Shown here: positions 39,531-62,525 of the stretch, one piece after another | Position numbering within the stretch: the stretch's first letter is position 1 | How the letters are laid out: each line of letters begins with the position of its first letter | Assembly: GCA_965637545.1 (NCBI GenBank) | Contig: OZ281496.1 | Location: 22,196,001 to 22,260,000, forward strand | Length of the DNA stretch: 64,000 bases | DNA from: Phallusia mammillata | Lineage: Eukaryota | Direction of reading: 5' to 3' | The notes under the pieces: generated by a model | The model's input: the letters and a program-made list of their open reading frames with translations, nothing else | Database searches by the model: none | Told to the model about the DNA's origin: nothing | Made by a program: the position numbers and the translations under genes

Positions 39531-40295
39531 AAACGAAGATTTGGTGTCATAGAACAGTCCTAGATATTCAAGAAGAAAAAGGGTGGGGACATGCAGAATT
39601 GTCAAAACTAAACAGCCATGTTGTAAAACGTTATCCTTCAAGGTGTGCCAAACAGTGATGGGGTAATGGTACAAATCCTCTCCAAGAACTTTAAACATGT
39701 TGCCCGACTGTAAGCAATCGCTTTATGTGTTGTTTGAAGTGTTTTTTTGTTATACGTTTTATTACGAGTCCGTTACATACATTTACGTGAAATAAAGCTG
39801 ACTTTAAATATCTTTTGGGGTGGAGCCATGTTTCTTAAGATTCTTTCTCCGACACACAAGTTGCCGAGTCGGGAATAGAACCCACAATCTTGTGAACACA
39901 TACGGATTGCTCAGACACAGGGGTCAGCAACGCCTGGCGGTTATTTTCCATGGCATGTCAAACGATTTGCGCGTTCATATTTAAGTACTTTTTCGCCAAA
40001 TTAAAACTATTAATTGGCCTGTTGTTGGTTCTTTACGTAATCGTTTTAAAAACTCAACCAAAGCTACACAAAAGATTTGGGCTGCTTTCTGATTGCCATT
40101 TACAACTATTACGAACAAAAATGTTGTCACCTGTTCCAGTATTAAAATGACAAGAGAATTGGCACGTGTTACGAGTTAAAAATTGTTGTGGACCTCCGCC
40201 CTAACTATTCGGGCATCCCGACGGCAATTCCGTTTCACTTGTCAAAAAAGGAGTGCTTATTGCAGATTCGAATGCTTTAATTTGCGTTGGTTATA

Positions 40296-40420
40296 GCAAC
40301 ATCTTTGGAACGCTGAACGTAGGCCACGCGTAGGTGTAGGTGTATGTCCGGCACGCAAACGATATCATATGTTGACTTACTGTAAAAGGAAGAGCCTACT
40401 ATATGTGCACTATTGTAAGT
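40296..40420 (+). promoter_or_regulatory. Conserved promoter / non-coding first exon block of the EGF paralogues
   Basis: gcaacatctttggaacgctgaacgtaggccacgcgtaggtgta.gtgtatgtccggcacgcaaacgata nearly invariant in all three units, ending in a gtaagt donor (40415, 46592, 52423); conserved tttgtatag acceptor ~35 nt before each ATG. Confidence 0.55.
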
Positions 40421-40711
40421 GTTTGTTTTGCAATCTCTTGCAATAAGGTCCAAACCTAATAAAAGTGAATCGAATGTTGAACATTCACAAAATGTTTAGG
40501 CTAGCCTACAGGATGGAAAGGAAAATATTCTTAGGCTTTCACTTATGGGGGCGCGAATTTTTAAAACTGTTAGTTCAGTTAATAAACAAAGTCGACATGA
40601 TAGTGTTATGACAGCTACCAGGCTATCTCATCACATGTTATCTGCTGTGTTTGCTGAACGTGCTTTATTTTGTATAGTTTGTAGGTGCTATGGTAAGCTA
40701 TTCACACTGTT

Positions 40712-43700
40712 ATGGAAGGGATAGTTGTGTTTTTGATCGTTAGCTTTGTTTCAACGCTAGCCATGTCTGATGAACCAGGTATAAAATTGAATTGAAATAC
40801 AGCGTTTTAAACTTGTCCGTTTAACATAAAAATATACAATTCGGTATTGACACCCAAACTACAGCTACAGTCACAGGGGTGCGGGAGTTGTAGGCCTAAT
40901 AAGTTAAGTGTAGTAATTTGTGACAAAGACTTGTATCTTTGTGCGAATATATAGATGGGCCTATGCCCAGGGTTGCCATCGACATATACCCCAAAATAAG
41001 GACAACCGAAAAATTAAGTTTTCATACAAAACGAAACAAACATTTTTGAATAAATCTTTGCTTTTATACGAGCCATGACAGCTCAAGTCTCGGTTTAATT
41101 TTCATTGTAACAAGGATTGGACTTGTAGTTGTTGAAAATAAGACAAAATAAGGACTCAAGTCAAAAACAAGGACATTTCTTAGAAATAAGCACAATACAT
41201 TTTTCTAAGACATTGCCCTTCCAAGTAAGGACAAATCTTAGAAATAAGGACTTTCATGTGTTTATATGTGATGGTTTTGTGTTGTTGCAGTTATTATCAC
41301 GTACATAGATCATGCCACTATACCTGACGGATTTGGAGGAAATATGATCAGTACGACTGTGCGAACTTTGGCGTATCCAACAAATAGAGGAAACAACACC
41401 TATTACACGTTATTAACCGATTCAAAGAACAAAGGAAGTAGGCCAGCAGTGTATTAGCACCAAAGCTATAAGCGAACCAGAAACCCGACTGTAGCCTACC
41501 CGATTTTAGGTTAAAAAGTCTAAATTGGTAAAATTTGAAACAAAACGAGGCAGATTGTGAAGTTAGGTCTGAGTAAAGACCGTTTTTTATTCGAACTTTA
41601 GTTTAAACTCGACCCGAAAATCCGACTAACAACTCCGCAAATGTGACGCCACATTTCAGGATAATATACATAGCTGTGGTTGATTTTGCAATTAGTATCA
41701 ATGGAGAAGCATCACGTAAACTATATAGGTGAACAAATTGTCTTATAGGCTAAATTGTCTTATATCTTATTCAGTTTCAAACATTTGCGAAACTTCTCTT
41801 CACGTTTGCGATGCAAATGCACAATGTGTTTCATTGCAAAATGGAACTTCAATTTACCGTTGTTCGTGCCTAAATGGATTCAACAAAACGGCAAGCACCA
41901 GAAGTTTTCTACCTTTCTACATCAAACCACAAGGAACATACTGTCCAGGTAACTAATAAGAGGCCTATTTTTCAATGTATGGTACTTTGCAGCCAGCAGT
42001 AGTGGGATTCAATTTTGTTGTCACTCGGTTCTATCACGGCTGAATTCCACCACTGGAAGTTGCAGCTCATAATGAAACCTTTGAATAAGCTGTGCAGTTT
42101 GAAAGGTTTATTGGTTCATCTCAAAGTTATAAGCGGACACAAAGCCAAAAGTTTAACCCTAATCCTTTTTTGGAAACTAACTGAATTTGTGTCACAAATG
42201 ATGTGTTAATTCAAGCCGGAATCAAGGCCCCTTATATAGAAACTAAAACCCGAACTCTTAATGACACACAACTCTTGTTCAGCTAAATCAGTGGTTCTCT
42301 AATCCTTTGCAAAACTATTCTCCTTACAACATGCTGGATAAATTCAGTTTATTTGCTTCGGATTACGTGAGAATGTTTCAATGGTAATTTATTACGTCAC
42401 AAACAGGACTAAAACAACATTTAAATTGTGCGCGAACAATCGCTTTTTAAGTGTTTTTAGCAAAAAATATTTCTTGTTGCAGAAAACTTATTTGTCTGTC
42501 TAATTTTTACTTATATACTCGTAAGATCTGATGTTACATGAGATTGTAGAAGTACTTCAGGCTCGACCTCACGGTCCCTCCGAAATCGCGTGGCGGACCC
42601 CTGAGGGACCGCGGACCTCAGTTTGAGAACCGCTGAGCTAAATCATCTTATTACCAAACTAGTTATCAAATTACTAAAGCTGAAATATAAGTCGAAAAAA
42701 CTCAATTGCCATCATAGAAAATTTTGATAATTGGAAGGCGAAAAAATTGGGAAAACAAAAATAGGTTTTTCCTAATATCTTTCAGATATTAACGAATGCT
42801 TGGACCCTGATTCAATCTGTACCAGGGATTTAAGTTGCCAAAACACTTGCTCAAGTGAAACAAGTTGTCAAAACACCAATGGAAGTTATGTATGCAACTG
42901 CCCACATGGATTTCTATTCAACGGAACAACATGCATAGGTAACGTATATTGCCCTACCCAGCAACGCAGTATAAACGGCCGTTGTTAGCTTTATACCATT
43001 ATCGTTGTGTTTTTTAAAGAAATTTAATGGCCGCTTTAATGTGATAAGATAAAAAATACTGCGTTAGACTTTAATGACATTTTATTTCGTCGCCATGCAC
43101 CAAATTTTAAAAATTCCTAAAAAAGAAGATTGAAATTGAACACACTAAAATCAATTTTTTTCAACAATAAGTTTACATTGGGTTATGAAACATGGCTTGT
43201 CGCATTTGTGCGCATAAAATTTGAAAAATATTACCCCATAGGTGTAACACATACAATACTCAACAACTGTTAATATTACAGCTTATAATTTAGATTTAAA
43301 TGAATGTCAAAGTGAAAACAACGTTTGCCCCGAAAAGGCAAACTGTTTAAACACGATTGGAAGTTATAAGTGCATTTGCCCACCCGGGACGGAACACAAG
43401 GACTCAAGGTGTTTTGGTAGGATTATACATAACTTTTAGGTTTTCGTTCAAAATATTTTACTCAATGGCAACATTGAACCATGCAAACGGTTAAACATGG
43501 GTGACTGGTTAAAGTTTCACCAGATTAACTAACTTATTTGTAGACATAAACGAATGCTTGGACCTTGATCCAATCTGTACCAAGGATTTAAGTTGCCAAA
43601 ACATGTGCTTAAGTGAAACAAGTTGTCACAACACATATGGAAGTTATGTATGCCAATGCCCACATGGATTTTTTTTCAACGGAACAACATGCATAGGTAA

Positions 43701-45643
43701 CTTGATTTGTTCATATCAGTGCTGTTAAAGCAGTGGTTCCCAAACTTTTTCATATTTTTTTCAAAACGGTCCCTTTGCCATTATTTCGAAGGCTAGCGGT
43801 CCTTAAGCCTAAATGTGTATTTCATAAAAACGAAAGTTGATTGCAGGATTTTAGCCAGTTATGCAAAATTGCGCATAACAATCATTCAAAGACAGCATGT
43901 GACATCACAAACAGGACAAAAAACATTACGATTGTGCGCGAACAATTGCATTTTTGATAGTTGTCATTCAATAAAGGCCATTGTTTAGCAATGGAGACGA
44001 TTTTCAATTCTACTTTGATTTTAAACTTATTTAGTGGCACAAACTGACGCCAAATAAGATTTTAGAATTACTTCAACCGCTTCGCGGTCCCCCCAAAATT
44101 GCCTCACGGACCCCAGTTTGGGAACCGCTGTGTTAAAGTTCTACTGCTTTTTCATATTAAGCACCATTTTATTTCGCCTTCAAGCCCTAAATTATAAAAC
44201 TCATAAAAAGTATGTTTTACGGTGCAATTCACGAAATTTGTTGCGGACATGTAGTGTGGCGCGACACAATAAAATCATATGTTTCAGCTGTTAATATTAC
44301 AGTTTATAATTTAGATTTAAATGAATGTCAAAGTGAAAAGAACGTTTGTCCCGAAAAGGTAAACTGTTTAAACACGATTGGAAGTTACAAGTGCATGTGC
44401 CCATCTGGGACGGAACACAAGGATTCAAAGTGTTTTGGTAGGTTAAAAAATAACGTATTGAGTTTTTATTCAAACTATTTTATTCATTATTCTTTAGCCC
44501 AATTCAGTTTTGATATTAGAAATGTTGCAAATGTATAATTTTGTTAAAACTACGCCATTATGTCAAATTTTTTGTTGCAATTTAAAGTGCCATCAAATAG
44601 TAGGAAAATGCACTTAGGAAAAACAAAAAAAATATTGTCTCGTAACACTTTTGTGAACAAAACTCGTGTTTTTAATGTTTAAAATTAGGTTTTGACGCTG
44701 CTCGACTTTAAATTAAAGTCTACGCCAGTGGTTCTCAACTCGTTTCAGGCCATGGACCGCCATTCCAATTAAATAAGTATCGTGGACCAGACCCATGTCA
44801 AATTAGGATAAAAAAGCATCCACAACAAGCGTATTCGCTTGAAATATATTATTTGAATACATAATTTAATTTTATGGAGATATAACACGTAACAACAAAA
44901 GGCCAATAACTCGCATAAGCAATTAATTATACGCAACTAGCCTTTTTTAAATTTAACCCAAAATACAATTAGCGTCCTGTGGACCACCCAAAAAGTCATC
45001 TGGACGGTCAATGGACCGCCAGTTAAGAACCACTGGTCTACGTAATGTTTTGTATGATTAGATATTAATGAATGTTCGGGAAACCACGTATGTCCTAATA
45101 CCTCGTGGTGTATCAACTCATACGGAAGTTACTTCTGTGAATGTAAAAGAGGATACACTGGAGATGGTAACACTTGTACAGGTAATTTAAAAAAGTGCAT
45201 TTTACCGGTATTAAGAATGGGTTTGGAAAAAATGAACATAGTCTATCTCTTTTTTGGAGGCCAACGCCTAAAATACGTTACGCCTGCCCCGTTGTCGTTG
45301 GATAATTTGACATTAGATATTGACGGTTTTAAGGAAGCTGATAACTTTACCTCAATTGAGCTCACTACATTCACTGGGTTAAAGCAATGTCGCAAGTTGA
45401 CTGCTTTAAGAAATGTGTTTAAGACGGGATTAGTACCAACAACCTTAAACTCACGAGTTCAAAATAAAATGTTGTGACATTTTTGGTTAAATACTGAATA
45501 GTTATGCGGTACTACCTTTTTCAGATTTTTCAGAACCAAGCCAGCTTACAAACATTAATAATGTTGTGACCATGACAACCATTGTGGTAATTGCTCTGTG
45601 CTATTGCAGCTACCTTCTGTTTGATGGAAATATTTTGTCCTAA
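40712..45643 (+). CDS. EGF-repeat membrane/GPI-type protein, paralogue 1 (~392 aa): signal peptide, Cys-free variable domain, 6 EGF, short hydrophobic tail
   Basis: Phase-1 exons 40712-40778 (MEGIVVFLIVSFVSTLAMSDEP), 41291-41437, 41775-41948, 42786-42938, 43294-43416, 43544-43696, 44315-44437, 45062-45181, 45525-45643; D(I/L)NEC...N.xGSY.C.C cbEGF motifs. Confidence 0.88.
40968..41252. mobile_element. Truncated copy of the 38875-39131 MITE family, unit 1 only
   Basis: Single end cagggttgccatc, aaataaggac repeats; absent from units 2 and 3. Confidence 0.65.
41997..42055. mobile_element. 59-bp minimal GAACCGG-family element (also 48598-48656)
   Basis: cagtagtgggattc...gaattccaccactg between duplicated ttgcagc; site empty in unit 3. 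Confidence 0.7.
42289..42635. mobile_element. hAT-type MITE (also 48890-49235)
   Basis: Ends cagtggttctc / gagaaccgctg; perfect TSD agctaaat; single agctaaat in unit 3 (~53970). Confidence 0.9.
43731..44130. mobile_element. hAT-type MITE, unit 1 only
   Basis: TIRs cagtggttcccaaact / agtttgggaaccgctg; perfect TSD tgttaaag; single tgttaaag in unit 2 (~50325). Confidence 0.92.
44726..45035. mobile_element. hAT-type MITE (also 50923-51232)
   Basis: Ends cagtggttctcaact / agttaagaaccactg; TSD gtctacgc/gtctacgt; absent from unit 3. Confidence 0.85.
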
Positions 45644-46133
45644 CCTTGCAACTGAAGCATTGTTCAATTATATTGCCAAAGAAAATTAAAAAGAAGAATA
45701 GTTGTGGGCAATTCTTTGTGAAGATTTGTAGATTAAAATTGAATATTAAATTGAAACTCTACTCTTTATTCGACCGTTATGTAAAATGTGTTTTTATCCG
45801 TTACTTTATTTGCTTCCACTATTCGATACGTAATTCAAAAAAATGTGCATTTGTTAAAAAAACACGAAGATTTTGTGTGTGTTTCTTTACAGATATAAAT
45901 CATTGACAGAAAAATAGAAAAAAATGACACATGTTTTCCACGTCGTAAAAGCAGCAAAATTATAACAGGGATGTATAAATATACAGTGTTCCCCTTTTTG
46001 TTTGTTTTTGTACAAAACATAATATGATTGAAAACTTTGCACGATAAAAATATACATACTGAAAATTTGAAACACAATAAACATAGACGCAGGTTTTTGA
46101 TGTCGTACCTTAGAAAAAATACGTTTTTCGCAG

Positions 46134-46187
46134 CTAATACTTTTGGTGCTTCATAATTGGTACCACGCATGTACAGTTGACTGTACA
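46134..46187 (-). pseudogene. Fragment of IL-17 terminal exon captured at the duplication junction
   Basis: Reads VNCTCVVPIMKHQKY*, versus VGCTCVIPILKHQK* at 56189-56233; flanking 3' UTR is also homologous. Confidence 0.85.
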
Positions 46188-46878
46188 GCAAACGATCAAT
46201 TGGCCTGTTGTTAGTTCTCTACGTAATCGTTTTAAAAACTCAACCAAAGCTCTACAAAAGATTGGGTTGCTCTCTGATTGCCATTTACAACTATTACGCA
46301 CAAAAATGTTTGCACTCATTCCAATTTTGACGTAACAAAAGAATTGGAACGCGGCGTGAAAAAAGGTTGCGGACCCCCGCCCTAACTATTATGGCATCTC
46401 GATGGCAATTCCGTTTCACTTGTGAAAAAGGAGTGCTGTTTGCAGATTTGAATGCTTTAATTACCATTGGTTATAGCAACATCTTTGGAACGCTGAACGT
46501 AGGCCACGCGTAGGTGTATGTGTATGTCCGGCACGCAAACGATACCATATGTTGAATTACTGTAAAAGGAAGAGCCTATATGTGCACTATTGTAAGTGTT
46601 TGTTTGGCAATCTCTTTCAAAAAGGTCCAAACCTATTAAGAAGCGAATCGATTTTTGAACATTTACAGAATGTTCAGGCCACAGGATGGAAAGGAAAATA
46701 TATTTAGGCTTTTAGTTGCGAATTTTTAAAACTGTTAGTTCAGTTAATAAACAAAGTCGACATGATAGTGTTATGGCAGCTGAATACCAGGTTATCTCAT
46801 CACATCTTAACTGCTCTGTTTGCTAAACGTGTTTTGTTTTGTATAGTTCGGAGGTGCTAGTAGGCTATTCACACTGTT

Positions 46879-49800
46879 ATGGCAGGGATAGTTGTGTTTT
46901 TGATCATTAGCTTTGTTTCAACGCTGGCCACGTCTGATGAACCAGGTATAAAATTGAATTGAAATACAGCGTTTTAAACTGGTTTCGTTTAATTTAACAT
47001 AAAAATATGCGATTGGGTATTGACAACCAAACTATAGCCTATAGCAGGGATGGCGAACCTTTTTAGTTGAATGGGTCAACCATGATATCAAAATTCGGAC
47101 AGAAAACAAAGTGGGTCACATATTTTATTACATGTCAATGTCAATGCTAAAATGCGTGTTGCTGCATTTTTTCTGAAAGTCTTGTAATCTTAGGTAGTTT
47201 TCAGCTTAATAAACGCTGCAGTCATATCTGAGCTGAGACGATTCTTGTCACTTGATTTTATGAAATTCTTGTGTGAAAACAAAGATTCGCATGAATATGT
47301 TGAACCGAACAGCGTCAACAAAGTTACAACAAATCGTTTCAAGTTGTACGTTTAAATAAACATATTTGTTGCCTCACAATTGACTAAACAATCTGAATTT
47401 TAAGACAATAGGCAATCTGACAAAGGGCTTGAAGCTAACTGTTGTGTTGCTTTTTAATCTTGGAAGTCTGGTAACCCTACCACTAGTAATCAGTATACAA
47501 TTTTGAAACTACAAGTGGGTCACTGAAATTCACGTGGTGGGTCACATTGTGACCCGCGGGTCAGTGGTTCGCCATCCCTGGCCTATAGCTACAGTCACAG
47601 GGGTGCGGGAGCTGTAAGTTAAGTGTAGTAATTTGTGGCAAAGACTTGTAATCTTTGTGTGAATATGTAGATAGGCCTATACCTTATCGCAATTTCGATA
47701 CTATTTAGTCCTCTTGATTAATGTCACTTCACATTTGTATTTTTTTAAACTATATTAAACATGAGGTAAATGGATCGCAACATTAGCTGTGAGGTGGGCG
47801 TGCAAGCAAAAAATGATAAAGTAAACTGGACTGTAGCCCAAAACGATTTTAAAATCTGAACTTATCTCCTTTTATGTATAATAAAAAAAAATGTGTTGTT
47901 GCAGTTATTATTACACTCGAAAGACAAACCACTATACTGGCCGGAGATGGAGGAAGATTTTTAACCAAGTTGGAAACTTTTGCGTATTCAACATTGAAAA
48001 GTGGAAACAACAGCTATTACACGCTATTGAACGATCCAAACAACGAAGGAAGTAAGCCTGTGTATTAGCATCAAAGTAACCCGGCTGTAGTACCCGATTT
48101 TAGGCTTAGAAGTCTAAATTAGCAAAATTTGAAACAAAACGAGGCGGATTGTGAAGTTAGGTCTGAGTAAAAACCGTTTTTTTTATTTCAACTCTAGTTT
48201 AAACTCGACCCGAAAAGCCGACAAACAACTCCGCAAATATGTCGCCATATTTTAGCTTTTATAGGATAATGTGAACAGCTGTAGTTTATTTTGCAACTAG
48301 TGTCAATGGAGAAGCATCACTTGAACTAGGCTAATGGTTATAGGCTAGTGGTAAACAAGTTTTCGCATTTTTCAGTTTCGAACATTTGCGAAACTTCTCT
48401 TCACGTTTGTGATGCAAATGCACAATGTGTTTCAATGCAAAATGGAACTTCAATTTACCGTTGTTCGTGCCTAAATGGATTCAACAAAACGGCAAGCACC
48501 AGAAGTTTTCTACCTTTCTACATCAAACCACAAGGAACTTACTGTCCAGGTAACTAATAAGAGGCCTATTTTTCAATGTATGGTACTTTGCAGCCAGCAG
48601 TAGTGGGATTCAATTTTGTTGTCACTCGGTTCTATCACGGCTGAATTCCACCACTGGAAGTTGCAGCTCATAATGAAACCTTTGAATAAGCTGTGCAGTT
48701 TGAAAGGTTTATTGGTTCATCTCAAAGTTATAAGCGGACACAAAGCCAAAAGTTCAACCCTAATCCTTTTTTGGAAACTAACTGAATTTGTGTCACAAAT
48801 GATGTGTTAATTCAAGCCGGAATCAAGGCCCCTTATATAGAAACTAAAACCCGAACTCTTAATGACACACAACTCTTGTTCAGCTAAATCAGTGGTTCTC
48901 TAATCCTTTGCAAAACTATTCTCCTTACAACATGCTGGATAAATTCAGTTTATTTACTTCGGATTACGTGAGAATGTTTCAATGGCAATTTATTACGTCA
49001 AACAGGACTAAAACAACATTTAAATTGTGCGCGAACAATCGCTTTTTTAGTGTTTTTAGCAAAAAAATATTTCTTGTTACAGAAAACTTATTTGTCTGTC
49101 TAATTTTTACTTATATACTCGTAAGATCTGATGTTACATGAGATTGTAGAAGTACTTCAGGCTCGACCTCACGGTCCCTCCGAAATCGCGTGGCGGACCC
49201 CTGAGGGACCGCGGACCTCAGTTTGAGAACCGCTGAGCTAAATCATCTTATTACCAAACTAGTTATCAAATTACTAAAGCTGAAATATAAGTCGAAAAAA
49301 CTCAATTGCCATCATAGAAAATTTTGATAACTGGAAGGCGAAAAAATTGGGAAAACAAAAATAGGTTTTTCCTAATATCTTTCAGATATTAACGAATGCT
49401 TGGACCCTGATTCAATCTGTACCAGGGATTTAAGTTGCCAAAACACTTGCTCAAGTGAAACAAGTTGTCAAAACACAAATGGAAGTTATGTATGCAACTG
49501 CCCACATGGATTTCTATTCAACGGAACAACATGCATAGGTAACGTATATTGCCCTACCCAGCAACGCAGTATAAACGGCCGTTGTTAGCTTTATACCATT
49601 ATCGTTGTGTTTTTTAAAGAAATTTAATGGCCGCTTTAATGTGATAAGATAAAAAATACTGCGTTAGACTTTAATGACATTTTATTTCGTCGCCATGCAC
49701 CAAATTTTAAAAATTCCTAAAAAAGAAGATTGAAATTGAACATACTAAAATCAATTTTTTTCAACAATAAGTTTACATTGGGTTATGAAACATGGCTTGT

Positions 49801-51845
49801 CGCATTTGTGCGCATAAAATTTGAAAAATATTACCCCATAGGTGTAACACATACAATACTCAACAACTGTTAATATTACAGCTTATAATTTAGATTTAAA
49901 TGAATTTCAAAGTGAAAACAACGTTTGCCCCGAAAAGGCAAACTGTTTAAACACGATTGGAAGTTATAAGTGCATTTGCCCACCCGGGACGGAACAATAG
50001 GACTCAAGGTGTTTTGGTAGGATTATACATAACTTTTAGGTTTTCGTTCAAAATATTTTACTCAATGGCAACATTGAACCATGCAAACGGTTAAACATGG
50101 GTGACTGGTTAAAGTTTCACCAGATTAACTAACTTATTTGTAGACATAAACGAATGCTTGGACCTTGATCCAATCTGTACCAAGGATTTAAGTTGCCAAA
50201 ACACGTGCTTAAGTGAAACAAGTTGTCACAACACATATGGAAGTTATGTATGCCAATGTCCACATGGATTTTTTTTTTCAACGGAACAACATGCATAGGT
50301 AACTTGATTTGTTCATATCAGTGCTGTTAAAGTGTCCTTTCTTCTACTGCTTTTTCATATTAAGCACCATTTTATTTCGCCTTCAAGCCCTAAATTATAA
50401 AACTCATAAAAAGTATGTTTTACGGTGCAATTCACGAAATTTGTTGCGGACATATAGTGTGGCGCGACACAATAAAATCATATGTTTCAGCTGTTAATAT
50501 TACAGTTTCTAATTTAGATTTAAATGAAATGTCAAAGAACGTTTGTCCCGAAAAGGTAAACTGTTTAAACACGATTGGAAGTTACAAGTGCATGTGCCCA
50601 TCTGGGACGGAACACAAGGATTCAAAGTGTTTTGGTAGGCTAAAAAATAACGTATTGAGTTTTTATTCAAACTATTTTATTCATTATTCTTTAGCCCAAT
50701 TCAGTTTTGATATTAGAAATGTTGCAAATGTATAATTTTGTTAAAACTACGCCATTATGTCAAATTTTTTGTTGCAATTTAAAGTGCCATCAAATAGTAG
50801 GAAAATGCACTTAGGAAAAACAAAAAAAATATTGTCTTGTAACACTTTTGTGAACAAAACTCGTGTTTTTAATGTTTAAAATTAGGTTTTGACGCTGCTC
50901 GACTTTAAATTAAAGTCTACGCCAGTGGTTCTCAACTCGTTTCAGGCCATGGACCGCCATTCCAATTAAATAAGTATCGTGGACCAGACCCATGTCAAAT
51001 TAGGATAAAAAAGCATCCACAACAAGCGTATTCGCTTGAAATATATTATTTGAATACATAATTTAATTTTATGGAGATATAACACGTAACAACAAAAGGC
51101 CAATAACTCGCATAAGCAATTAATTATACGCAACTAGCCTTTTTTAAATTTAACCCAAAATACAATTAGCGTCCTGTGGACCACCCAAAAAGTCATCTGG
51201 ACGGTCAATGGACCGCCAGTTAAGAACCACTGGTCTACGTAATGTTTTGTATGATTAGATATTAATGAATGTTCGGGAAACCACGTATGTCCTAATACCT
51301 CGTGGTGTATCAACTCATACGGAAGTTACTTCTGTGAATGTAAAAGAGGATACACTGGAGATGGTAACACTTGTACAGGTAATTTAAAAAAGTGCATTTT
51401 ACCGGTATTTAGAATGGGTTTAGAAAAAATGAACATAGATTATCTCTTTTTTGGAGGCCAACGCCTAAAATACGTTACGCCTGCCCCGTTACTTGTCTGT
51501 TGGATAATTTGACATTAGATATTGACGGTTTTAAGGAAGCTGATAACTTTACCTCAATTGAGCTCACTACATTCACTGCGTTAAAGCAATGTCGCAAGTT
51601 AACTGCTTTAAGAAATGTGTTTAAGACGGGATTAGAACCAACAACCTTAAACTCACGAGTTCAAAATAAAATGTTGTGACATTTTTGGTTAAATACTGAA
51701 TAGTTATGCGGTACTACCTTTTTCAGATTTTTCAGAACCAAGCCAGCTTACAAACATTAATAATGTTGTGACCATGACAACCATTGTGGTAATTGCTCTG
51801 TGCTATTGCAGCTACCTTCTGTTTGATGGAAATATTTTGTCCTAA
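46879..51845 (+). pseudogene. EGF-repeat paralogue 2: exons 5-7 disrupted (pseudogene or exon-skipped form)
   Basis: Exons 46879-46945, 47905-48051, 48376-48549, 49386-49538, 49894-50016 (C>F; TAG at 49998-50000), 50144-50298 (T10 vs T8, +2 frameshift), 50518-50634 (net -6 nt, first Cys lost), 51259-51378, 51727-51845. Confidence 0.75.
47045..47580. mobile_element. hAT-type MITE, unit 2 only
   Basis: TIRs cagggatggcgaacc / ggttcgccatccctg; perfect TSD gcctatag. Confidence 0.92.
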
Positions 51846-52717
51846 CCTTGCAACTGAAACAGTGTTCAGTTATACTGTCAAAGAAAATTAAAAAGAAGAA
51901 TAGTTGTGGGCAATTCTTTGTGCAGATTCGTAGTTTAAAATTGAATATTTAATTGAAACTCTACACTTTATTTGACCGTTATGTAAAATGTGTTTTTATC
52001 CGTTACTTCATTTCCTTCCACTGTTCGATGCGTAATTCAAAAAGTTGTGCATTTGTTAAAAATACACGAAGATTTTGTGTATTTTTCTTTACAAAAATAA
52101 ATCATTAACAGAAAAAAAGGAAAAAAATGTCACATGTATTCCACGTCGTAAAAGCAGCAACAGTATAACAGGGATGTATAAATATACAGTGTGCCCCGTT
52201 TTGTTTGTTTTTGTACAAAACAGGTATCGTACCTGAGTAATTCCGTTTCACTTGTGAAAAAGTAGTGCTAATGCAGATTCGAATGCTTTAACTAGCGTTG
52301 GCTATCGCAACATCTTTGGAACGCTGAACGTAGGCCACGCGTAGGTGTAGGTGTATGTCCGGCACGCAAACGATACCATATGTTGACTTACTGTAAAAGG
52401 AAGAGCCTATATGTGCACTATTGTAAGTGTTTGTTTGGCAATCTCTAGCAAAAAGGTTCAAACCTATTAGGAAGCGAATCGATTTTTGAACATTTACAGA
52501 ATGTTCAGGCCACAGGATGGAAAGGAAAATATATTTAGGCTTTTAGTTACGGGGGCGCGAATTTTTAAAACTGTTAGTTCAGTTCACAAACAAAGTCTAA
52601 ATGATAGTGTTATGGCAGCTGATTACCAGGTTATCTCATCACATCTTAACTGCTCTGTTTGCTAAACGTGTTTTGTTTTGTATAGTTCGGAGGTGCTAGT
52701 AGGCTATTCACACTGTT

Positions 52718-55663
52718 ATGGCAGGGATAGTTGTGTTTTTGATCGTTAGCTTTGTTTCAACGCTGGCCACGTCTAATGAACCAGGTAAAAATTAAATAAA
52801 ACAAGTTGTAGTGTAGTAATTTGTGTCCAAGACTTGCAATGTTTGTGTGAATATATGCTAGGCCTATACCTTGGCGCAATTTCCCCTTGATTAATGTCAC
52901 TTCACATTTGTATTTTTTAACTGTTTTGATTTTGAACATGAGGGTAAATAGATCGCACCATCAGCTGTTAGGTGTGCGCGTAAGCAAAGAAATGATAAAG
53001 TAAATGGGACTATAGCCCAAAACGATTTTGAAATTTGTGACTTATCTCCTTTCTTTGTATATATGTGATAGTTTTGTGTTGTTGCAGTTATTATCACGTA
53101 CATAGAACATGCCACTAAACATGACGGATTTGGGGGACATATGATCAGTACGACTGTGCGAAATTTGACGTATCCAACATTGAATCGTGGAAACAACAGC
53201 TATTACACGTTATTAACCGATTCAAAGAACAAAGGAAGTAGGCCAGCAGTGTATTAGCACCAAAGTTATAAGCAAGCCAAAAACCCGACTGTATTGTCTG
53301 ATTTTAGAATTGAAAGTCTAAATTGGGTTTTGAAAGTTGGTAAAATTTAAGACAATATAAGGCCGAGTGTGATATTTATGCCTGAGTAGAGACGTTTTAT
53401 TTCTACTTAAATTTGAACCCGACCGAAAACGCCTACTTAAAAGTCTGCAAATATGACGCCATATTTAAGATAGAACAAAACTGTCGCATTTTCCAGTTTC
53501 AAACATTTGCGAATCTTCTCTTCACGTTTGCGATGCAAATGCAAAATGCGTTTCATTGCAAAATGGAACTTCAATTTACCGTTGTTCGTGCCTAAATGGA
53601 TTCAATAAAACGGCAAGCACTAAAATTTTTGAACCTTTACACATCATTCCACAAGGAACATACTGTCCAGGTAACTAATAAAAGGCATTTGTGATTACGA
53701 TATTTTTTAATGTGTGGTAGGCTACCTTGCAGCTCCTAATTAAAACCGTTTGAAAAATTTGTGTAGTGTTAAAGGTTTATTGGTTCATCTCAAAGTTATA
53801 AGCGGACACAAAGCCCAACGTTCAACCCCAATCCTTTTATGGAAACTAACTGAATTTGTGTCACAAATGTTGAGTTAAGTCAAGCCGGAATCAAGCCCAT
53901 TTTATATATACAGTGTGCCCATTTTATAGGATCTTACGCCCGAACTTTTCGCGACATAACTTTTGTTCAGCTAAATTATCTGTTAACAAACTAGTTATCC
54001 TGAAACATAATATGGAAAAACTCAATTGCCATTGCAGAAAACTTTGATAACTAGAAGGCGAAAAAAATTGGGAAAAGTCTTTCATAATATCTTTCAGATA
54101 TTAACGAATGTATGGACCCTGATCCAATCTGTACCAGGGATTTAAGTTGCCAAAACACTTGCTCAAGTGAATCAAGTTGTCAAAACACAAATGGAAGTTA
54201 TGTATGCGACTGCCCACATGGATTTGTATTCAACGGAACTACATGCATAGGTAACCTGTATTGTTCATTACTCAACGCAGCATAAAACGGTTTTTGCTGA
54301 TTTTAAATTTATCCCTCTGTCGCTGTGTCTGCCTATACACGTGCAAATAATGCATTTGAAAAACTGTGTATATCAGTGCTGTTTATGTCTTTTCTGCACA
54401 CTAAAAAACTATTCGTTTTTATAGGTAACATTTGAAAAATATTACCCAACGGGCATAACACATAGCCTATATATTCAACAACTATTAATATATCAGTTTT
54501 AAATATAGATTTAAATGAATGTCAAAGTGAAATGAACGTTTGTCCCGAAAAGGCAAACTGTTCAAACACAATTGGAAGTTACAAGTGTATATGCCCACCA
54601 AGGACAGAACTCAAGGATTTCAAATGTTTTGGTAGGTCATAAACAAAAATATAAAAAATAACTTTGTTGGTTTTTACTCAAAATATTTTATTTGTTATTC
54701 TTTTGCCCAAATTTGTCTTGATATTAGAAATATTGCAAATGTACGTGTGATAATTGTGTTGAAACTATACGTCACTGTATGTCAAATGTTATGTTGCGTT
54801 TTAAAGTGCTATCAGGTATTAGGAAGATGCACATGGGTAAAAACCATCATTGTCTTATAACAGCACAAAACCCGTATTTTAAATATTTCAAAAATTGATG
54901 ATGATGTTGCCTGCATTTAAAATAGGGTTCACAAAACGCTTTTGCATGATTAGATATTAATGAGTGTTCAGGAAACCACGCATGTCCTAATACCTCGTGG
55001 TGTATCAACTCATACGGAAGTTACTTTTGTGAATGCAAAAGAGGATACGCAGGAGATGGTATCACTTGTACAGGTAATTTGAAAAAAAGTTTATTTTGCC
55101 GATATTTACAATGGGTTTGGAAAAAATGAACGTCTGCAGTGGTGGGATTCGGCCGGTTCGCACCGGTTCTATAGAATCGCCACTGGTCTGTTTTTGTTTT
55201 TGGTGAGCGAACGCCTAGAATGCGTTATACGCCTGTCCCGTTACAGGTCTGTTGGATAATTTTACATGAGATATTGAAGGTTTTCAAGAAATTGGTAACT
55301 TTAACTTAATTTGGCTCACTTCGTTTTGCTGGGTTAAAGCGATGTCGCAAGTTTGCTGCTTTAAGAAATACAAATGGTCAGGACGGGATTAGAACCAACA
55401 ATCTTAACCTCACGAGTTCAAAATTAAATGTTGTGACACTTTTAGTTACATACTAAATAGTCATGCGGTACCACTTTTTTTCAGATTTATCAGAACCAAG
55501 CCAGTTAAAGAAAATAAGTAACATTGTAACCACGACAGCCATTGTGGTAATTGCTATGTGCTACGTTGTAGCTATCTTCTGTTTGATGGAAATATTTTGT
55601 CCCAACCGTGCAACTGAAGCAGTGTTCAGTTATATTTTCAAAGATAATCAAAAAGAAGAATAG
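52718..55663 (+). CDS. EGF-repeat type I membrane protein, paralogue 3 (~321 aa): signal peptide, variable domain, 4 EGF, TM, short tail
   Basis: Exons 52718-52784, 53088-53237, 53497-53670, 54098-54250, 54509-54631, 54954-55073, 55485-55663; open throughout; TM IVTTTAIVVIAMCYVVAIFCLM. Confidence 0.9.
55137..55185. mobile_element. 49-bp minimal GAACCGG-family element, unit 3 only
   Basis: cagtggtgggattcggccggttcgcaccggttctatagaatcgccactg with gtctg on both flanks. Confidence 0.7.
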
Positions 55664-55712
55664 TTGTGGGCAATTCTTTGTGCAAATTTGTAGTTTAAAA
55701 ATGAATGCTTCT

Positions 55713-55812
55713 CTGTAAAAACATCAATCCGATAAATGATAAGCTGCAGACAGTGCACACTGTTTTGAGCTGCACTGATGAGACCTTATAGGTCAAAACA
55801 ACGTGCACTGTC
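55713..55812. mobile_element. 100-bp TSD-flanked insertion containing a family C hammerhead and an inverted copy of its 3' half
   Basis: 11-bp direct repeat tgaatgcttct at 55702-55712 and 55813-55823; hammerhead 55770-55812 on plus with G12>A; homologous to 35257-35334. Confidence 0.8.
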
Positions 55813-56188
55813 TGAATGCTTCTTTATTTTGTATTTACCTGTTACGTCAAATGTTTTGTTAACATCTTTTTTCGTTTGCCTTTAGTTACAGGTTAAATTG
55901 TTCTAAATGTCTTAATGAAAACGATGATTTTTTGCGTGGGTTTATTACAGAAATGAACATTCACAGAAAAAAATTGAAAAATTCGGCAGATATGTATTGC
56001 ACGTCGTAAAAAATAGCAGCAAAAATATAACAGGGATGTATAAATATACAGTGTGCCCCTTTTTGTTTTTGTACAAAACATAAAACTTTACACGATAAAA
56101 ATATTTATACTGAAGATTTGAAACACAATAAACATAAACGCAGATTTTTGATGTCGTACCTTAGAAAAAAAAAACGTTTTAGCAGCTA

Positions 56189-57620
56189 TTACTTTTGATG
56201 CTTCAAAATTGGTATCACGCATGTACAGCCAACTGAAACTTGTACGGTTTCTTTAACATAACTTCTCGAACCACGACGTTTGCGAAATACTTCTACAGAC
56301 ACAGAAAGAGGAACAGACTTTAATGTTCTGGTTTCCTTTTCAGTCTCGGGGTTAATGCACCCACGGCAGAGGCATCTTTTTTCTATGATATAACTCGGTA
56401 TCCTGCAGAAAAAATAAAGCCCTGATTAGCCTATTTCTTTGTTGCCATATTGGCGTTTGGTAGATAAAAAACCAACCGGTGTAAATATCTAACAAGGCAT
56501 TTGATACGATTGTAGATACATATGTAACAGTTGTAAATGGAACGTATTTAGAATGAATACAGAGTATACTTTAGTTGTGCTTTTACGTTTATACAATCTT
56601 TAAGCGTAAAACGACAAAGTTTGCTTTTTTAAACAGCAACTAGAATTGACATATTTTGTACCTTTTTTCTCGTGTACAAAAATACTTTGAATTTTCGATG
56701 GTGTGAGTCAAATGAAAGAATAAATCTTACATATTAATTTCCATAAAGGTTAACCGTACAGAAAACGATCGAGTTTCGATGTAGGTAGGTGTCGGTTATA
56801 ATTTCAATTAAGGAATGAAAACCTGCGTTTCGGTTTTGATAATGTTTAACGTTGAATTACATTTGCGTATTTCGTATGTGTGGGTAGTGTTTTCTATGAA
56901 ACTAACTTCCCGCATAGTTTAGCTATTCAGAATCAACTAGGTTTCGATAAGCAGTTACCTGATTTGAACCTAAAACGGGAAGTATTAAAAGCATGAGGAA
57001 GTGCCTGTAGTACCTGCGTTTGTTGTAATCGATGGTGTCATGGTATGGAGAAAGGCTTCTTTGCCCTGCAGGAAAACTTGCGTTGAAATGTTGCAGACCG
57101 TTGGAAGGGCAATTGTAACGTTGGCCTTTTCGCGACCGTTTTTGAGCTTTTCGCAAAACGCTTTCAGTGACAAGAGCCAAAGATTTCCGGAAAGCCTCGA
57201 GCAATGGATTCGCCATTAGATGTTCACATTCAGTTCTGTAGGAAAATTGTTATGTAGGTTAAGGTTCCTCAAATTGGGGTAAGCACAACGTAAAACGAAA
57301 CCAGAAGTAGTTAAAACTGAATATTTTCAACAGACCCACGAAATACAACTATTTAAAAAGATCTTATTAAAACTTAGCAACTTTTTGACATGCGCAAAAA
57401 GATATACAAAACTATTTGAAAAGACACACTGTACGTGTTATTAACTTGCCTTTATTACCGTTTTAACAACTGTTTATGTATCTACATACCGGTTAACGAT
57501 TTCTGGCACAAGGCATTTGTATTGTTTACGTATCTCTGCCGTTCCTCTGCGTCTGCGATTGCTCGTTGCCATGGCCGTAAGCAGCAAAAACAAAAGCATT
57601 GAAATTGTCAACTTGTCCAT
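56189..57620 (-). CDS. IL17: Interleukin-17 family cytokine, copy 1 (188 aa)
   Basis: Exons 57620-57490 (signal peptide MDKLTISMLLFLLLTAMA), 57235-57014 (CP...GQRSLSPY..IDYNKRR), 56402-56189 (IP...CLCRGC...SVP...VSVGCTCV); phases 2/2. Confidence 0.92.
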
Positions 57621-57672
57621 CTCAAGACCTCTCCGAAATGTCGACTGTCCAAATTGGCATCCCTCACTGCTG

Positions 57673-57680
57673 TTTATATA
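57673..57680 (-). promoter_or_regulatory. Candidate TATA box of IL-17 copy 1
   Basis: TATATAAA on minus, about 55 nt upstream of the ATG. Confidence 0.5.
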
Positions 57681-58557
57681 CTGCCAAGTTCCGTCTTACT
57701 TTATATCAGAGTCATGGGAATTGCGTGGGGGTTGTAAAGCAATTGCGCCATTCAGAAGACATACCAAGGTTCGCGATGATGTAGTAAAGTGTAAATGCGT
57801 GCGTCTATCTTTCGCCTGTTCGCTGTTTCAAATCTCCCTTTTTCCGATTTCGACCTAGGAGAGGGTATTTGTAGCGCAAGTTCCTATAATACATTTATAT
57901 TCAAATTTCCCGTGGCGTGTGAATGCAAGAGGAGCATGAACGTATTGTATACCATTCTAAACCGTATTCAGAAATTCTGGTGTAAAAGGATACCCTTACT
58001 GCGAGTTAAATATATTCACATCGTTACCGGGGTTAGCACTATGACTAAATACAACAACACTTAATGTCACCTACCGATTTTCAATTGTTCTATTTTCACT
58101 GGCGCGACTATATTTGCCTACAAGAAAATAGCGCAATAATTAATCGCATTGTTTAGAATTTATATATCTGGCATACATATACTGTTATTGATTCTATTTT
58201 ATCTATTCTAAAATAAAAACACAAGTATGATTTAAAGTTAATAAAACGACATTATTTTACGACAACGGTCGGCTTTTAGAAGACAAGTCAAAAGTGTCTT
58301 TTTGTGTGTTTACTATCTGATGTTTTTACTTTAGGAGAAAGGGGTGTTCTACACCGTAGATCTGCAAATAGCCGGCGCGACCCACACAAATGGTTCTACC
58401 CACACAAATTAACATCCAACGTCTTATGACCCAAACTACATAAAAGCAACTAAATCAGATCACTTTATTTTCCTTTGTGAAATTTGTCGGTGTTCTAAGT
58501 TTAACAAAAACTAAAACTTTCACAGATGCCACTCCTGCTCTACTGCAAGCGTTTCAG

Positions 58558-58924
58558 CAGGGCTCTTCAACCGAGGTTTTTTAGGGTTTGTAGTAGCAAT
58601 TCAAACAAATGCTTCATGACATTATTGATGCAAACAGTATAGCTCCCCTGCATAGCATGGTTAACCTTCTCTAACATTCTAGTCTGGAGTCACGATTGCA
58701 ATGTTGCCCAATTGTGACGTAATAAACCCAGTCTTGTTACTCTCCGACGAATTGTCAACTATAATTATGTGCTCGGGTGTGTCGGTGAAAAAATGCAGGT
58801 TTCATTCTTGTATGTAGCCTGTTTGTATTATGCTATGTTTTTAACATTATTATTTGGTGGTTCCCGCAAAATTTGACAAAATACCCTAAGGGTTCCTTGT
58901 GACTAATAAAGTTTAATAGCACTG
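58558..58924. mobile_element. Old hAT-like MITE
   Basis: Degenerate TIRs cagggctcttcaac / gtttaatagcactg (11/14); TSD decayed. Confidence 0.45.
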
Positions 58925-59546
58925 CTATACAGCAGGTGCGCATTATGAAAGTTAGAGTACAACAGTAATATAATAAATCAGGATTGGCAAAACCATTGAG
59001 CTACAACAAACCAACAAAGCGAAAATCCCTAAGAAAGTAAACAGATTTACTTGGTGTACATCGAGTCGCATGTTTACTTTCATGTACTTCTGCAAACAGA
59101 AAACACGAAGAAAAGTGTTCGTTACAAAAACACGTTTGGAATTTTTGCGAATTAAAGTTTAAGCACTTGCGACCCAAATTTCCGGACCACTGTTGTAAAC
59201 AAGCACTAATACAAACTTAACAACAAAGGATATTGGCTGTTGCATTACAAACTGTTTCATGTCATGTATATAGGGTTTGTCGTACAAATGACCACAAAAA
59301 TGTTTAGATTTGTGCTCTTTTTTCCTCACCCATGCTATCACATGTAATATTGCAAATCCGGCCTTTTTTGATTCAGCAAATAATTGTTTTGTTTGTGTTT
59401 GTATCTAAAGCCATGGAAGTTCAAAAAAGTTGGCTCTAAATATGTCAGTCGTATTTGTGACAACGAAAGTATTTATTCTTTACTTTGCTTATTTTAACAC
59501 AGTGTGCACCAATCAAGCCAACATGTCTGATTCGGTCGACCAGAAC

Positions 59547-59681
59547 CAGACAAAATCATCTTTAGATTGTCCAGGGTTCAAAGTTTGAAAAAGCAGGGCT
59601 TCCTTAAATGTTAACAGACAAAATCATCTTTAGATTGTCCAGGGTTCAAAGTTTGAAAAAGCAGGGCTTCCTTAAATGTTA
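59547..59681. repeat. Perfect 67-bp tandem duplication
   Basis: 59547-59613 identical to 59615-59681. Confidence 0.95.
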
Positions 59682-62185: not shown

Positions 62186-62525
62186 AAAATTTCCCGCCAA
62201 AAACTTGTGCAATGCGCCGGGAGAATGTGGGTCAGGGGAATTTGAATGACATCACTTCAAGAAAGCCGAGGCTAAACCGTGATTGGCGGTTGACATCACG
62301 TGCTAAAAATAACCCGGAGAGCTGAGCACGTGACGGCCACAACACGCATCATTAATCGCGTGTTGTTTTTGCTTTCCATGAAAGTGATACTTTTTTGTTT
62401 CCTCTTCGAAGTGCGGCCTGCGCTACAGTCTACGAGCTAAGTTGTGTCGAAATAGGGAAATCCCCACTTTTCTTGTAAAACTCTGTTGCAATTTCGATTT
62501 CTCCGAAAACGTTTTCAAATTCCCC
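62186..62525. promoter_or_regulatory. Cluster of NF-kB-like sites upstream of IL-17 copy 2
   Basis: GGGAAATCCC 62455-62464 (consensus); GGGGAATTTG 62235-62244 (+) and 62516-62525 (-); GGGAAATTTT 62186-62195 (-); TGACATCA twice; AP-1 TGAGTCA at 61919-61925. Confidence 0.55.

What the first reader, a model, noticed from the sequence alone, without database searches (positions are those of the whole stretch)
40010..56230. Tandem array of surface EGF-repeat genes with a hypervariable N-terminal exon, abutting an IL-17 cluster
Three paralogues share signal peptide + ~48-aa Cys-free domain + EGFs + hydrophobic C-terminus. Exon 2 of copy 2 is only about 24/49 identical to copy 1, although the two copies are near-identical from exon 3 onward, introns included. 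Exon 2 of copy 1 instead resembles copy 3 (7 substitutions plus 1 insertion, few synonymous changes). A variable distal domain on a homogenised stalk resembles recognition receptors. Polymorphic EGF-repeat proteins act in ascidian self/non-self recognition (e.g. Halocynthia HrVC70), but this architecture lacks a ZP domain and I do not recognise it as a described family. Function is inference.
Basis: partly seen in the sequence, partly recalled or inferred. Interest (0 to 1): 0.85.

Follow-up and report, generated by a model that had tools for sequence, protein, structure and literature searches.

The report
Tandem sea-squirt EGF surface genes
Three neighbouring genes for membrane-anchored calcium-binding EGF proteins are a real tandem array. 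One copy changed very fast in the small exon that codes the protein's outer tip, but that copy is damaged and its tip barely varies between animals, so a self/non-self recognition role is unproven.

Summary
Three + strand units (40004-46189, 46190-52238, 52239-56230) each carry a signal-peptide exon, a 48-49-codon Cys-free exon 2, an EGF exon with a long C5-C6 loop, 3-5 calcium-binding EGF exons and a hydrophobic terminal exon. All internal exons are phase 1-1 with AG/GT borders.

The array is not a haplotype misassembly. Contigs from independent studies cross the unit 1|2 junction (X1, X3) and the unit 2|3 junction (X5).

Exon 2 of unit 2 carries 35 lineage-specific changes in 141 aligned sites, against 3 and 6 in the other copies (relative-rate p = 6e-6). 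Flanking sequence shows 0.6-5% unit-2-specific change. No donor sequence exists in the genome.

From exon 3 to the stop codon, units 1 and 2 are about 99% identical, which I read as gene conversion.

Three points go against a "hypervariable receptor":
- Unit 2's exon 2 shows 0-1 SNP across three other individuals.
- Unit 2 has a stop codon and a lost cysteine in its EGF exons.
- No RNA evidence was found.

The genes belong to a family of at least 15 paralogues in this genome, in which exon 2 evolves near neutrality (omega 0.8-2). First-reader notes of this scan already flag the family's other cluster on other DNA. The function, a surface adhesion or recognition glycoprotein, is inference.

The parts
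40712..45643 (+). Unit 1 gene, intact, 392 codons. Exons: 40712-40778 (signal peptide), 41291-41437 (exon 2, Cys-free), 41775-41948 (EGF with long C5-C6 loop), calcium-binding EGF exons 42786-42938, 43294-43416, 43544-43696, 44315-44437 and 45062-45181, and terminal hydrophobic exon 45525-45643.
   Evidence: AG/GT at every border, phase 1-1 exons, open frame when spliced. EGF_CA scores of 36-44 bits exceed the 27-bit cut-off.
46879..51845 (+). Unit 2 gene, damaged. Exons: 46879-46945, 47905-48051 (divergent exon 2), 48376-48549, 49386-49538, 49894-50016 (Cys to Phe at 49906, stop at 49998-50000), 50144-50298 (+TT in a T run near 50269), 50518-50634 (net -6 nt, first Cys lost), 51259-51378, 51727-51845.
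   Evidence: Skipping the three damaged phase 1-1 exons restores a 259-codon frame. The +TT is absent from unit-2-type contigs of X1 and X5. The exon 50518-50634 lesion is present in X1 and X3.
52718..55663 (+). Unit 3 gene, intact, 321 codons. Exons: 52718-52784, 53088-53237, 53497-53670, 54098-54250, 54509-54631, 54954-55073, and 55485-55663 (transmembrane segment plus a 20-residue tail).
47915..47990 (+). Fast-diverged patch inside exon 2 of unit 2 (codons 4-29).
   Evidence: 28/75 bases differ from unit 1, against about 10-11% in the flanking introns. dN is 0.67-0.80 and dS 0.17-0.24. No similar sequence elsewhere in the genome or the window.
41770..45656 (+). Tract about 99% identical between unit 1 and unit 2 (partner 48371-51858), running from just before exon 3 to just after the stop codon. 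Read as a gene-conversion tract.
   Evidence: 9 and 11 unit-specific changes against 320 for unit 3 over 1979 three-way aligned sites.
46137..46190 (-). Fragment of an IL-17 terminal exon (about its last 15 codons) at the unit 1|unit 2 junction (46189/46190).
   Evidence: The - strand translation ends like the true IL-17 terminal exon at 56192-56425. The junction is bridged by contigs of X1 (45777-46251, 0 differences) and X3 (45693-46251).
52223..52238 (+). 16-nt filler at the unit 2|unit 3 junction.
   Evidence: The same 16 letters stand between the two sides of a joint in run X5 (table 5c; reference letters).
40285..40445 (+). Block 270-430 nt upstream of the ATG, 95-100% identical in all three units. 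Candidate promoter or 5' UTR.
   Evidence: only three matches in the genome, one per unit.
56192..63703 (-). Three IL-17 genes, tail to tail with unit 3.
   Evidence: PF06083, E = 2e-17 to 6e-17.

Best explanation
This is a genuine three-copy tandem array of a lineage-specific (ascidian) gene family. Each gene encodes a type I membrane glycoprotein: signal peptide, a roughly 49-residue Cys-free N-terminal cap, one EGF with a long C5-C6 loop, a rod of 3-5 calcium-binding EGF modules and a C-terminal membrane anchor. The array arose by two segmental duplications. The first cut inside the neighbouring IL-17 terminal exon and split off unit 1. The second produced units 2 and 3. Later, non-allelic gene conversion copied unit 1's stalk (exon 3 to the stop codon) onto unit 2, or the reverse. 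That conversion, and not a special homogenising mechanism, gives the 'variable tip on a homogenised stalk' pattern. Across the whole family the N-terminal exon is weakly constrained (omega about 1). On the unit 2 lineage it went through a burst of about 35 substitutions that neutral drift at the flanking rate cannot explain. Adaptive change of the tip is the likeliest cause, and a local mutational event is the alternative. Unit 2 has since picked up lesions in three EGF exons, so it is either decaying or functional only if those symmetrical exons are skipped. Shown: the anatomy, the reality of the tandem, the mosaic of identities, the rate excess and the lesions. Inferred: the order of events, selection as the cause, membrane topology and a cell-surface binding function.
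For: Units and mosaic identities. Exon models with AG/GT borders and open frames for units 1 and 3. Calcium-binding EGF modules above Pfam cut-offs. Junctions present in independent samples: (X1 and X3 for 46189/46190; X5 for the 16-nt filler joint). IL-17 exon fragment at the junction. Unit-2-specific changes are 35/141 in exon 2, against 8/550 (promoter and exon 1), 12/221 (intron 2) and 11/1979 (exon 3 to stop). dN/dS is about 3-4 in the patch, about 1.1 for unit 1 versus unit 3 exon 2, and 0.27 for the pooled EGF exons. Family-wide, exon 2 has omega 0.8-2.0 against 0.2-0.6 for exon 3. At least 15 paralogues share the same exon plan.
Against: No transcript evidence: the one putative RNA run laid covered only intronic repeats. 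Synonymous sites in the patch are few (about 18), so dN greater than dS is only marginal on its own (binomial p = 0.04-0.07). Differences are spread evenly over codon positions (10, 10, 8), which also fits an unconstrained or imported stretch. Unit 2 has lost the otherwise nearly invariant Tyr-4 of the domain and carries disabling lesions, which fits decay. Units 1 and 2 share a 2-nt deletion that removes the cytoplasmic tail kept in unit 3, so even unit 1 may be impaired. The order of duplications rests on junction anatomy alone.
Confidence: 0.6

Rival explanations
1. One reading: the genes are polymorphic recognition receptors. Diversifying selection keeps the distal exon 2 domain variable, between paralogues and between alleles, while conversion homogenises the EGF stalk. 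They act in self/non-self or pathogen recognition, perhaps together with the adjacent IL-17 genes.
For: Exon 2 has omega of 1 or more in all paralogue comparisons, here and in the 27.7 Mb cluster. There is a rate burst on unit 2. The single SNP seen in exon 2 (47931 A>G in X3) is non-synonymous. The design is a surface anchor plus a rigid calcium-binding EGF rod plus N-glycosylated tip.
Against: Unit 2's exon 2 is identical in X1 and X5 and has 1 SNP in X3, the same density as the flanking introns (4 differences in 833 nt). The divergent copy is damaged. There is no expression evidence. IL-17 adjacency is a single observation. Omega near 1 is equally the signature of weak constraint.
Confidence: 0.2
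2. Unit 2 is a decaying pseudogene and its exon 2 patch has no functional meaning. The patch comes from a local mutational event at a recombination joint (it lies exactly between unit-3-like and unit-1-like ancestry), or from conversion by a donor allele or paralogue that is absent from this assembly.
For: The patch sits between a 5' flank most like unit 3 and a 3' flank most like unit 1. Differences are even over codon positions. Tyr-4 is lost. There is a stop and a lost Cys in the EGF exons, and the exon 50518-50634 lesion is shared by X1 and X3.
Against: Relaxed constraint alone cannot exceed the neutral rate seen in the flanks (1-5% against 25%). No donor exists in the 240 Mb assembly. The frame and the family motifs (G-x-G-G, E-T-x-A-Y) are kept. 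The EGF lesions lie inside the about 99% identical conversion tract, which I take to postdate the exon 2 change.
Confidence: 0.17
3. Assembly artefact: units 1 and 2 are two haplotypes of one gene wrongly laid in tandem.
For: About 99% identity over 3.9 kb, introns included. The +TT frameshift in a T run looks like a homopolymer error and is absent from other samples.
Against: Contigs from two different studies bridge 46189/46190 with 0 and 4 differences, and a third study holds the unit 2|3 joint with its 16-nt filler. The junction carries a truncated IL-17 exon, the mark of a real duplication breakpoint.
Confidence: 0.03

Closest known systems
Paralogous clusters in the same genome (C3:27.66-27.88 Mb and C1:6.53-6.69 Mb; loci L004-L019)
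   Same: Same exon plan: signal-peptide exon, about 49-codon Cys-free exon 2 with the motif I-V-V-Y-N-x-T...P-D-G-x-G-G...V-E-T-x-x-Y-x-N, an EGF with a long C5-C6 loop, calcium-binding EGF exons, and (seen in L007 only) a transmembrane segment. Exon 2 evolves faster than exon 3.
   Different: Only 17-33% identity to unit 1 in exon 2. Stalks are much longer (up to 20 or more EGF exons). In L007, extra membrane-proximal EGFs and a longer cytoplasmic tail.
Ci-meta1 (Ciona) and Hemps (Herdmania), ascidian EGF-repeat proteins of metamorphosis
   Same: Ascidian lineage-restricted proteins made mostly of EGF and calcium-binding EGF repeats behind a signal peptide (as summarised in PMC3760835).
   Different: Described there as secreted: Ci-meta1 with 6 EGF plus 13 calcium-binding EGF repeats, Hemps with 4 EGF plus 3 novel Cys-rich repeats. 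No membrane anchor or Cys-free N-terminal domain is reported.
HrVC70/HaVC80 (Halocynthia vitelline-coat self-sterility proteins)
   Same: Polymorphic ascidian proteins built of EGF-like repeats and implicated in self/non-self recognition (own knowledge, and cited in PMC6916515).
   Different: They derive from a ZP-domain precursor with 12-13 EGF repeats, and the variability lies within the EGF repeats. Here there is no ZP domain, there are 3-5 calcium-binding EGFs, and the variability lies in a non-EGF N-terminal exon.
Botryllus fuhc-sec
   Same: Signal peptide plus EGF domains, at a tandem locus of recognition genes under positive selection (PMC3691228).
   Different: fuhc-sec is a 555-residue, 17-exon secreted protein with only two EGF domains and extreme allelic polymorphism. 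Here the proteins are anchored, and unit 2's exon 2 is nearly monomorphic in the samples seen.
Vertebrate EGF-TM7 receptors (CD97/ADGRE5, EMR2/ADGRE2)
   Same: An N-terminal non-calcium EGF followed by a short rod of calcium-binding EGFs encoded by symmetrical, skippable exons; binding at the tip; EGF regions homogenised between paralogues by gene conversion (own knowledge, not checked here).
   Different: Those have a GAIN domain and seven transmembrane helices and no Cys-free N-terminal cap. Here there is a single hydrophobic anchor.

Membership tests
Calcium-binding EGF repeat proteins (Pfam EGF_CA, PF07645) | D/N-x-D/N-E-C start and six-cysteine EGF pattern scoring above the Pfam gathering cut-off | tested here: met
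   Exons 42786-42938, 43294-43416 and 45062-45181 score 36, 44 and 39 bits against a cut-off of 27.
Calcium-binding EGF repeat proteins (Pfam EGF_CA, PF07645) | One module per symmetrical phase 1-1 exon | tested here: met
   All EGF exons start after AG in phase 1 and end before GT in phase 1. Lengths are 120-174 nt, all multiples of 3.
ZP-domain EGF proteins of the HrVC70/HrVC120 type | A zona pellucida domain in the precursor | tested here: not met
   No ZP hit in any exon or in the ten largest remaining + strand open frames of unit 1. The spliced frame closes directly after the last EGF and the anchor exon.
ZP-domain EGF proteins of the HrVC70/HrVC120 type | High allelic polymorphism between individuals | tested here: inconclusive
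   Unit 2's exon 2 shows 0, 0 and 1 differences in three individuals. Units 1 and 3 were not sampled, and contigs hide minor alleles.
Type I / GPI-anchored surface glycoprotein | N-terminal signal peptide and a C-terminal hydrophobic segment of about 20 residues | tested here: met
   By inspection of the translations only: a hydrophobic core follows the start Met in exon 1, and the terminal exon holds a 20-26-residue hydrophobic run. No predictor was run.
Type I / GPI-anchored surface glycoprotein | Experimental or predictor-based discrimination of transmembrane helix from GPI signal | not testable with these tools
   Units 1 and 2 end 6 residues after the hydrophobic run. Unit 3 has a 20-residue tail containing Arg.
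Diversified immune-type recognition receptor families (working definition) | dN greater than dS concentrated in the putative binding domain | tested here: inconclusive
   Patch omega is about 3-4 but on about 18 synonymous sites (p = 0.04-0.07). Whole exon 2 omega is about 1.1-1.5. Family-wide omega is 0.8-2.0.
Diversified immune-type recognition receptor families (working definition) | Expression in immune or contact tissues | not tested
   No RNA holder was found. The one putative RNA run laid covers only repeats.

The most novel reading that the evidence does not exclude
The three genes, and the family of at least 15 members they belong to, form an undescribed ascidian surface-recognition system. 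In it, a small glycosylated N-terminal cap on a calcium-stiffened EGF rod is the specificity determinant. New specificities arise by bursts of adaptive substitution in the single cap exon, while conversion keeps the rods alike. Unit 2 would be a young specificity variant expressed through skipping of its damaged EGF exons.
Probability: 0.15. Interest if true: 0.7.

Novelty: new variant of a known kind. Interest (0 to 1): 0.4.

Why it matters
Ascidians are the closest invertebrate relatives of vertebrates, and their recognition systems (fuhc, Themis, VC70) are lineage-specific and were found one at a time. This locus adds a well-delimited family of anchored EGF-rod proteins whose only non-EGF part, a 49-residue cap with no detectable relatives, evolves fastest. 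It also gives a clean natural example of an exon-sized rate burst (25% against 1-5% in the flanks) beside a fresh conversion tract. If adult expression and allelic diversity were shown, it would be a tractable candidate recognition family. If not, it is an instructive case of mosaic evolution and early pseudogenisation in a tandem array.

Tried and rejected
- Haplotype misassembly: rejected. The junctions are present in independent samples.
- Extra coding exon at 42075-42229 / 48600-48800: rejected. It is a high-copy repeat, about 75-fold the depth of unique parts.
- Coding exon at 45217-45474: rejected. It has a stop in unit 3 and only intron-level conservation.
- Donor for the unit 2 patch: none found. 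I searched the own genome by protein and DNA, compared nucleotides with 12 paralogues, and ran a local alignment against both strands of the window, with shuffled controls.
- Homologues of the exon 2 domain: none found. Pfam gave none. A profile search of 1.84 billion representatives gave only three repeat-type hits of 37-48 bits made of many short stretches. The ESM Atlas feature search fell below the recognition threshold.
- AlphaFold2 on the 15-sequence exon 2 alignment gave only a hairpin plus a short helix at pLDDT 60. I ran no fold search, because a low-confidence model gives meaningless matches.
- PDB sequence search with exon 3: only generic EGF similarity (NELL1, LDLR).
- Rfam: only a tRNA elsewhere in the window.
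- HrSMLP1 of Halocynthia was checked and is unrelated (FNIII/DD3-3-like).
- RNA evidence: no run holds the exons.
- Spliced models were checked for reading frame only inside a local script.
- The search for homologous proteins was not used. Its length window excludes full-length relatives of single-exon queries, and the exhaustive search had already found no fragment.
Full report
**The array and the gene models**

Self-comparison of 38-58 kb shows three head-to-tail units on the + strand: unit 1 at 40004-46189, unit 2 at 46190-52238 and unit 3 at 52239-56230.

Reading the open stretches and their splice signals gives one gene per unit. Each gene has:
- a 67-nt first exon with a start Met and a hydrophobic signal peptide;
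- a 147-150-nt exon 2 without cysteines;
- a 174-nt exon with six cysteines, an EGF whose C5-C6 loop is 24 residues long;
- calcium-binding EGF exons of 120-153 nt (five in units 1 and 2, three in unit 3);
- a terminal exon with a 20-26-residue hydrophobic run.

Every internal exon begins after AG and ends before GT in phase 1, in all three units.

Spliced in a local script only, to check the frame, unit 1 gives 392 codons and unit 3 gives 321 codons without stops. All searches were made exon by exon, by reference.

The EGF exons pass the Pfam EGF_CA cut-off (36-44 bits against 27). Neither the exons nor the ten largest leftover open frames of unit 1 hit ZP or any other family.

- Exon 2 of unit 1 against unit 2 is 49% identical in protein.
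- Unit 1 against unit 3 differs by seven substitutions and one inserted residue.
- Units 1 and 2 differ at about 1% of sites from just before exon 3 (about 41770) to just after the stop codon (about 45656), introns included.
- Three IL-17 genes lie tail to tail with unit 3 on the - strand (PF06083, E about 1e-17).

**The array is not an assembly artefact**

I laid Logan contigs of three DNA runs from three different studies, plus one putative RNA run, on 45000-50999.
- Contigs of X1 (45777-46251, no difference) and X3 (45693-46251, four differences) bridge the unit 1|unit 2 junction at 46189/46190.
- X5 holds a joint whose 16 intervening letters are exactly the filler at 52223-52238 between units 2 and 3.
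- The unit 1|2 junction carries the last roughly 15 codons of an IL-17 terminal exon on the - strand (46137-46190). This is the scar of a real duplication whose right breakpoint fell inside the neighbouring IL-17 gene.

**Likely order of events**

Only unit 3 lies next to the intact IL-17 gene, and only units 1 and 2 keep the upstream segment 40004-40226. The simplest order is therefore:
1. Unit 1 split off first.
2. The remaining copy then duplicated into units 2 and 3.

This fits the 96-99% identity of units 2 and 3 over the promoter and exon 1, and their 84-92% identity over intron 1. Under this order, the roughly 99% identity of units 1 and 2 from exon 3 to the stop codon must be later gene conversion. 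That includes the two extra EGF exons that unit 3 lacks. Over that tract there are 9 and 11 unit-specific changes against 320 for unit 3. This order is inferred from the junction anatomy alone.

**The anomaly is exon 2 of unit 2**

- Of 141 three-way aligned sites, 35 changes are private to unit 2, against 6 for unit 3 and 3 for unit 1 (relative-rate test p = 6e-6).
- In the flanks, unit-2-private changes are 8/550 (promoter and exon 1), 12/221 (intron 2) and 11/1979 (exon 3 to stop).
- The excess is concentrated in codons 4-29 (47915-47990). There, 28 of 75 bases differ from unit 1, against about 10-11% in the adjoining introns (p = 2e-9).
- Nei-Gojobori estimates for the patch are dN 0.67-0.80 and dS 0.17-0.24. 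The pooled EGF exons give omega 0.27 between units 1 and 3.
- With only about 18 synonymous sites, dN greater than dS is marginal on its own (p = 0.04-0.07). The differences fall evenly on the three codon positions.
- No possible donor exists. Protein and DNA searches of the 240 Mb genome find nothing. Nucleotide comparison with 12 paralogues and a local alignment against both strands of the window give nothing above the homologous exon itself.
- Relaxed constraint cannot push divergence above the neutral level of the flanks. What remains is adaptive change, a local mutational event at what is also a switch point of ancestry (unit-3-like on the 5' side, unit-1-like on the 3' side), or import from an unsampled allele.

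**Evidence against calling this a hypervariable receptor**

- Unit 2's exon 2 is identical in X1 and X5. In X3 it carries a single, non-synonymous SNP (47931), within a contig that has four differences in 833 nt. Its diversity is therefore no higher than that of the introns. Contigs hide minor alleles, and units 1 and 3 could not be sampled.
- Unit 2 is damaged in three consecutive EGF exons:
  - a Cys to Phe change and a stop in 49894-50016;
  - a +TT in a T run in 50144-50298;
  - a net 6-nt loss that removes the first cysteine in 50518-50634.
- The +TT is absent from contigs of X1 and X5 that cross the unit-2-specific deletion joint, so it is a polymorphism or a homopolymer error of the assembly.
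- The 6-nt lesion is present in X1 and X3. At least two of the three changes in exon 49894-50016 are shared by X1 and X5.
- Skipping the three symmetrical exons restores a 259-codon frame. Whether this happens is unknown.
- Unit 2 has also lost the otherwise nearly invariant Tyr-4 of the domain.
- No RNA run holds the exons. The one putative RNA run laid covers only intronic repeats.
- Units 1 and 2 share a 2-nt deletion in the terminal exon, which replaces the transmembrane end and 20-residue tail kept in unit 3 with a six-residue end.

**The genes are not orphans**

Searches of the same genome with exon 2 and exon 3 find at least 15 genes with the same exon plan:
- the three in this window;
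- about ten at C3:27.66-27.88 Mb;
- two on C1:6.53-6.69 Mb.

Many of these have far longer EGF rods. One of them, L007, shows a clear transmembrane segment with a cytoplasmic tail.

Exon 2 keeps a recognisable motif across them at 17-33% identity to unit 1. Among close paralogues of the 27.7 Mb cluster, exon 2 has omega 0.8-2.0, while exon 3 has 0.2-0.6. Fast evolution of the cap is therefore a property of the whole family, not of this array.

The cap has no detectable relatives:
- no Pfam family;
- nothing credible among 1.84 billion representative proteins with a profile search;
- an uninformative Atlas look-up.

AlphaFold2 on 15 sequences gives only a beta-hairpin plus a short helix at pLDDT 60.

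First-reader notes of this scan describe the 27.7 Mb cluster. Another agent names the genome as Phallusia mammillata. I did not verify that name.

**Most likely working**

The product is probably a membrane-anchored, N-glycosylated rod. Calcium-binding EGF modules would hold a small cap away from the cell surface, and the cap, perhaps with the first EGF, would be the binding end. Differences in rod length and cap sequence among paralogues would change reach and partner. This is inferred from architecture alone.

**Closest described ascidian proteins**

- Ci-meta1 and Hemps are secreted EGF-repeat proteins (PMC3760835).
- HrVC70 is a ZP-derived EGF protein.
- fuhc-sec is a secreted protein with two EGF domains (PMC3691228).

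None of these has this cap-rod-anchor design.

**Verdict**

The evolutionary mosaic is explained by duplication plus gene conversion. The rate burst in one exon is real and unexplained between selection and mutation. The recognition-receptor reading is possible but unsupported by the population and expression data that could be reached here.

Noticed in passing
window 47039-47600, 48600-48800, 49000-49400, 50800-51000: Intronic stretches with contig depth about 75- to 640-fold that of the unique parts in all three DNA runs, so they are high-copy repeats. 47039-47600 is an insertion specific to unit 2's intron 1. The copy at 48600-48800 (42000-42200 in unit 1) looked like an exon by conservation but is a repeat.
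   Followed up: partly
window 40285-40445 (also 46467-46620, 52296-52451): Block upstream of the ATG that is 95-100% identical in all three units, more conserved than the coding exons, and found nowhere else in the genome. Candidate shared promoter or 5' UTR.
   Followed up: partly
window 45590-45643 versus 55550-55663: Units 1 and 2 share a 2-nt deletion in the terminal exon relative to unit 3. The old frame, still open in unit 1, encodes the rest of the transmembrane segment and a 20-residue tail. Units 1 and 2 end six residues after the hydrophobic run and could be tail-less or GPI-type.
   Followed up: partly
window 43732-44138: 399 nt present in unit 1's intron between the third and fourth calcium-binding EGF exons and absent from unit 2. 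Contigs of X1 and X5 carry the unit-2-type joint.
   Followed up: no
G000:C3:27.66-27.88 Mb and G000:C1:6.53-6.69 Mb (L004-L019): Two further clusters of the same family, with rods of up to 20 or more EGF exons. In one member, L007, there are extra membrane-proximal EGFs and a cytoplasmic tail with Tyr motifs.
   Followed up: partly
window 42786-42938 and 43544-43696: These two EGF exons encode 51-residue calcium-binding modules with eight cysteines instead of six. The exon pair 43544-43696 / 44315-44437 is a tandem duplicate of 42786-42938 / 43294-43416 (84-91% identical).
   Followed up: no
window 37569-37641 (-): A tRNA gene (Rfam RF00005, 74.6 bits) upstream of the array.
   Followed up: no
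window 55715-55815: About 100 nt present only in unit 3's 3' flank relative to units 1 and 2. I did not examine it.
   Followed up: no
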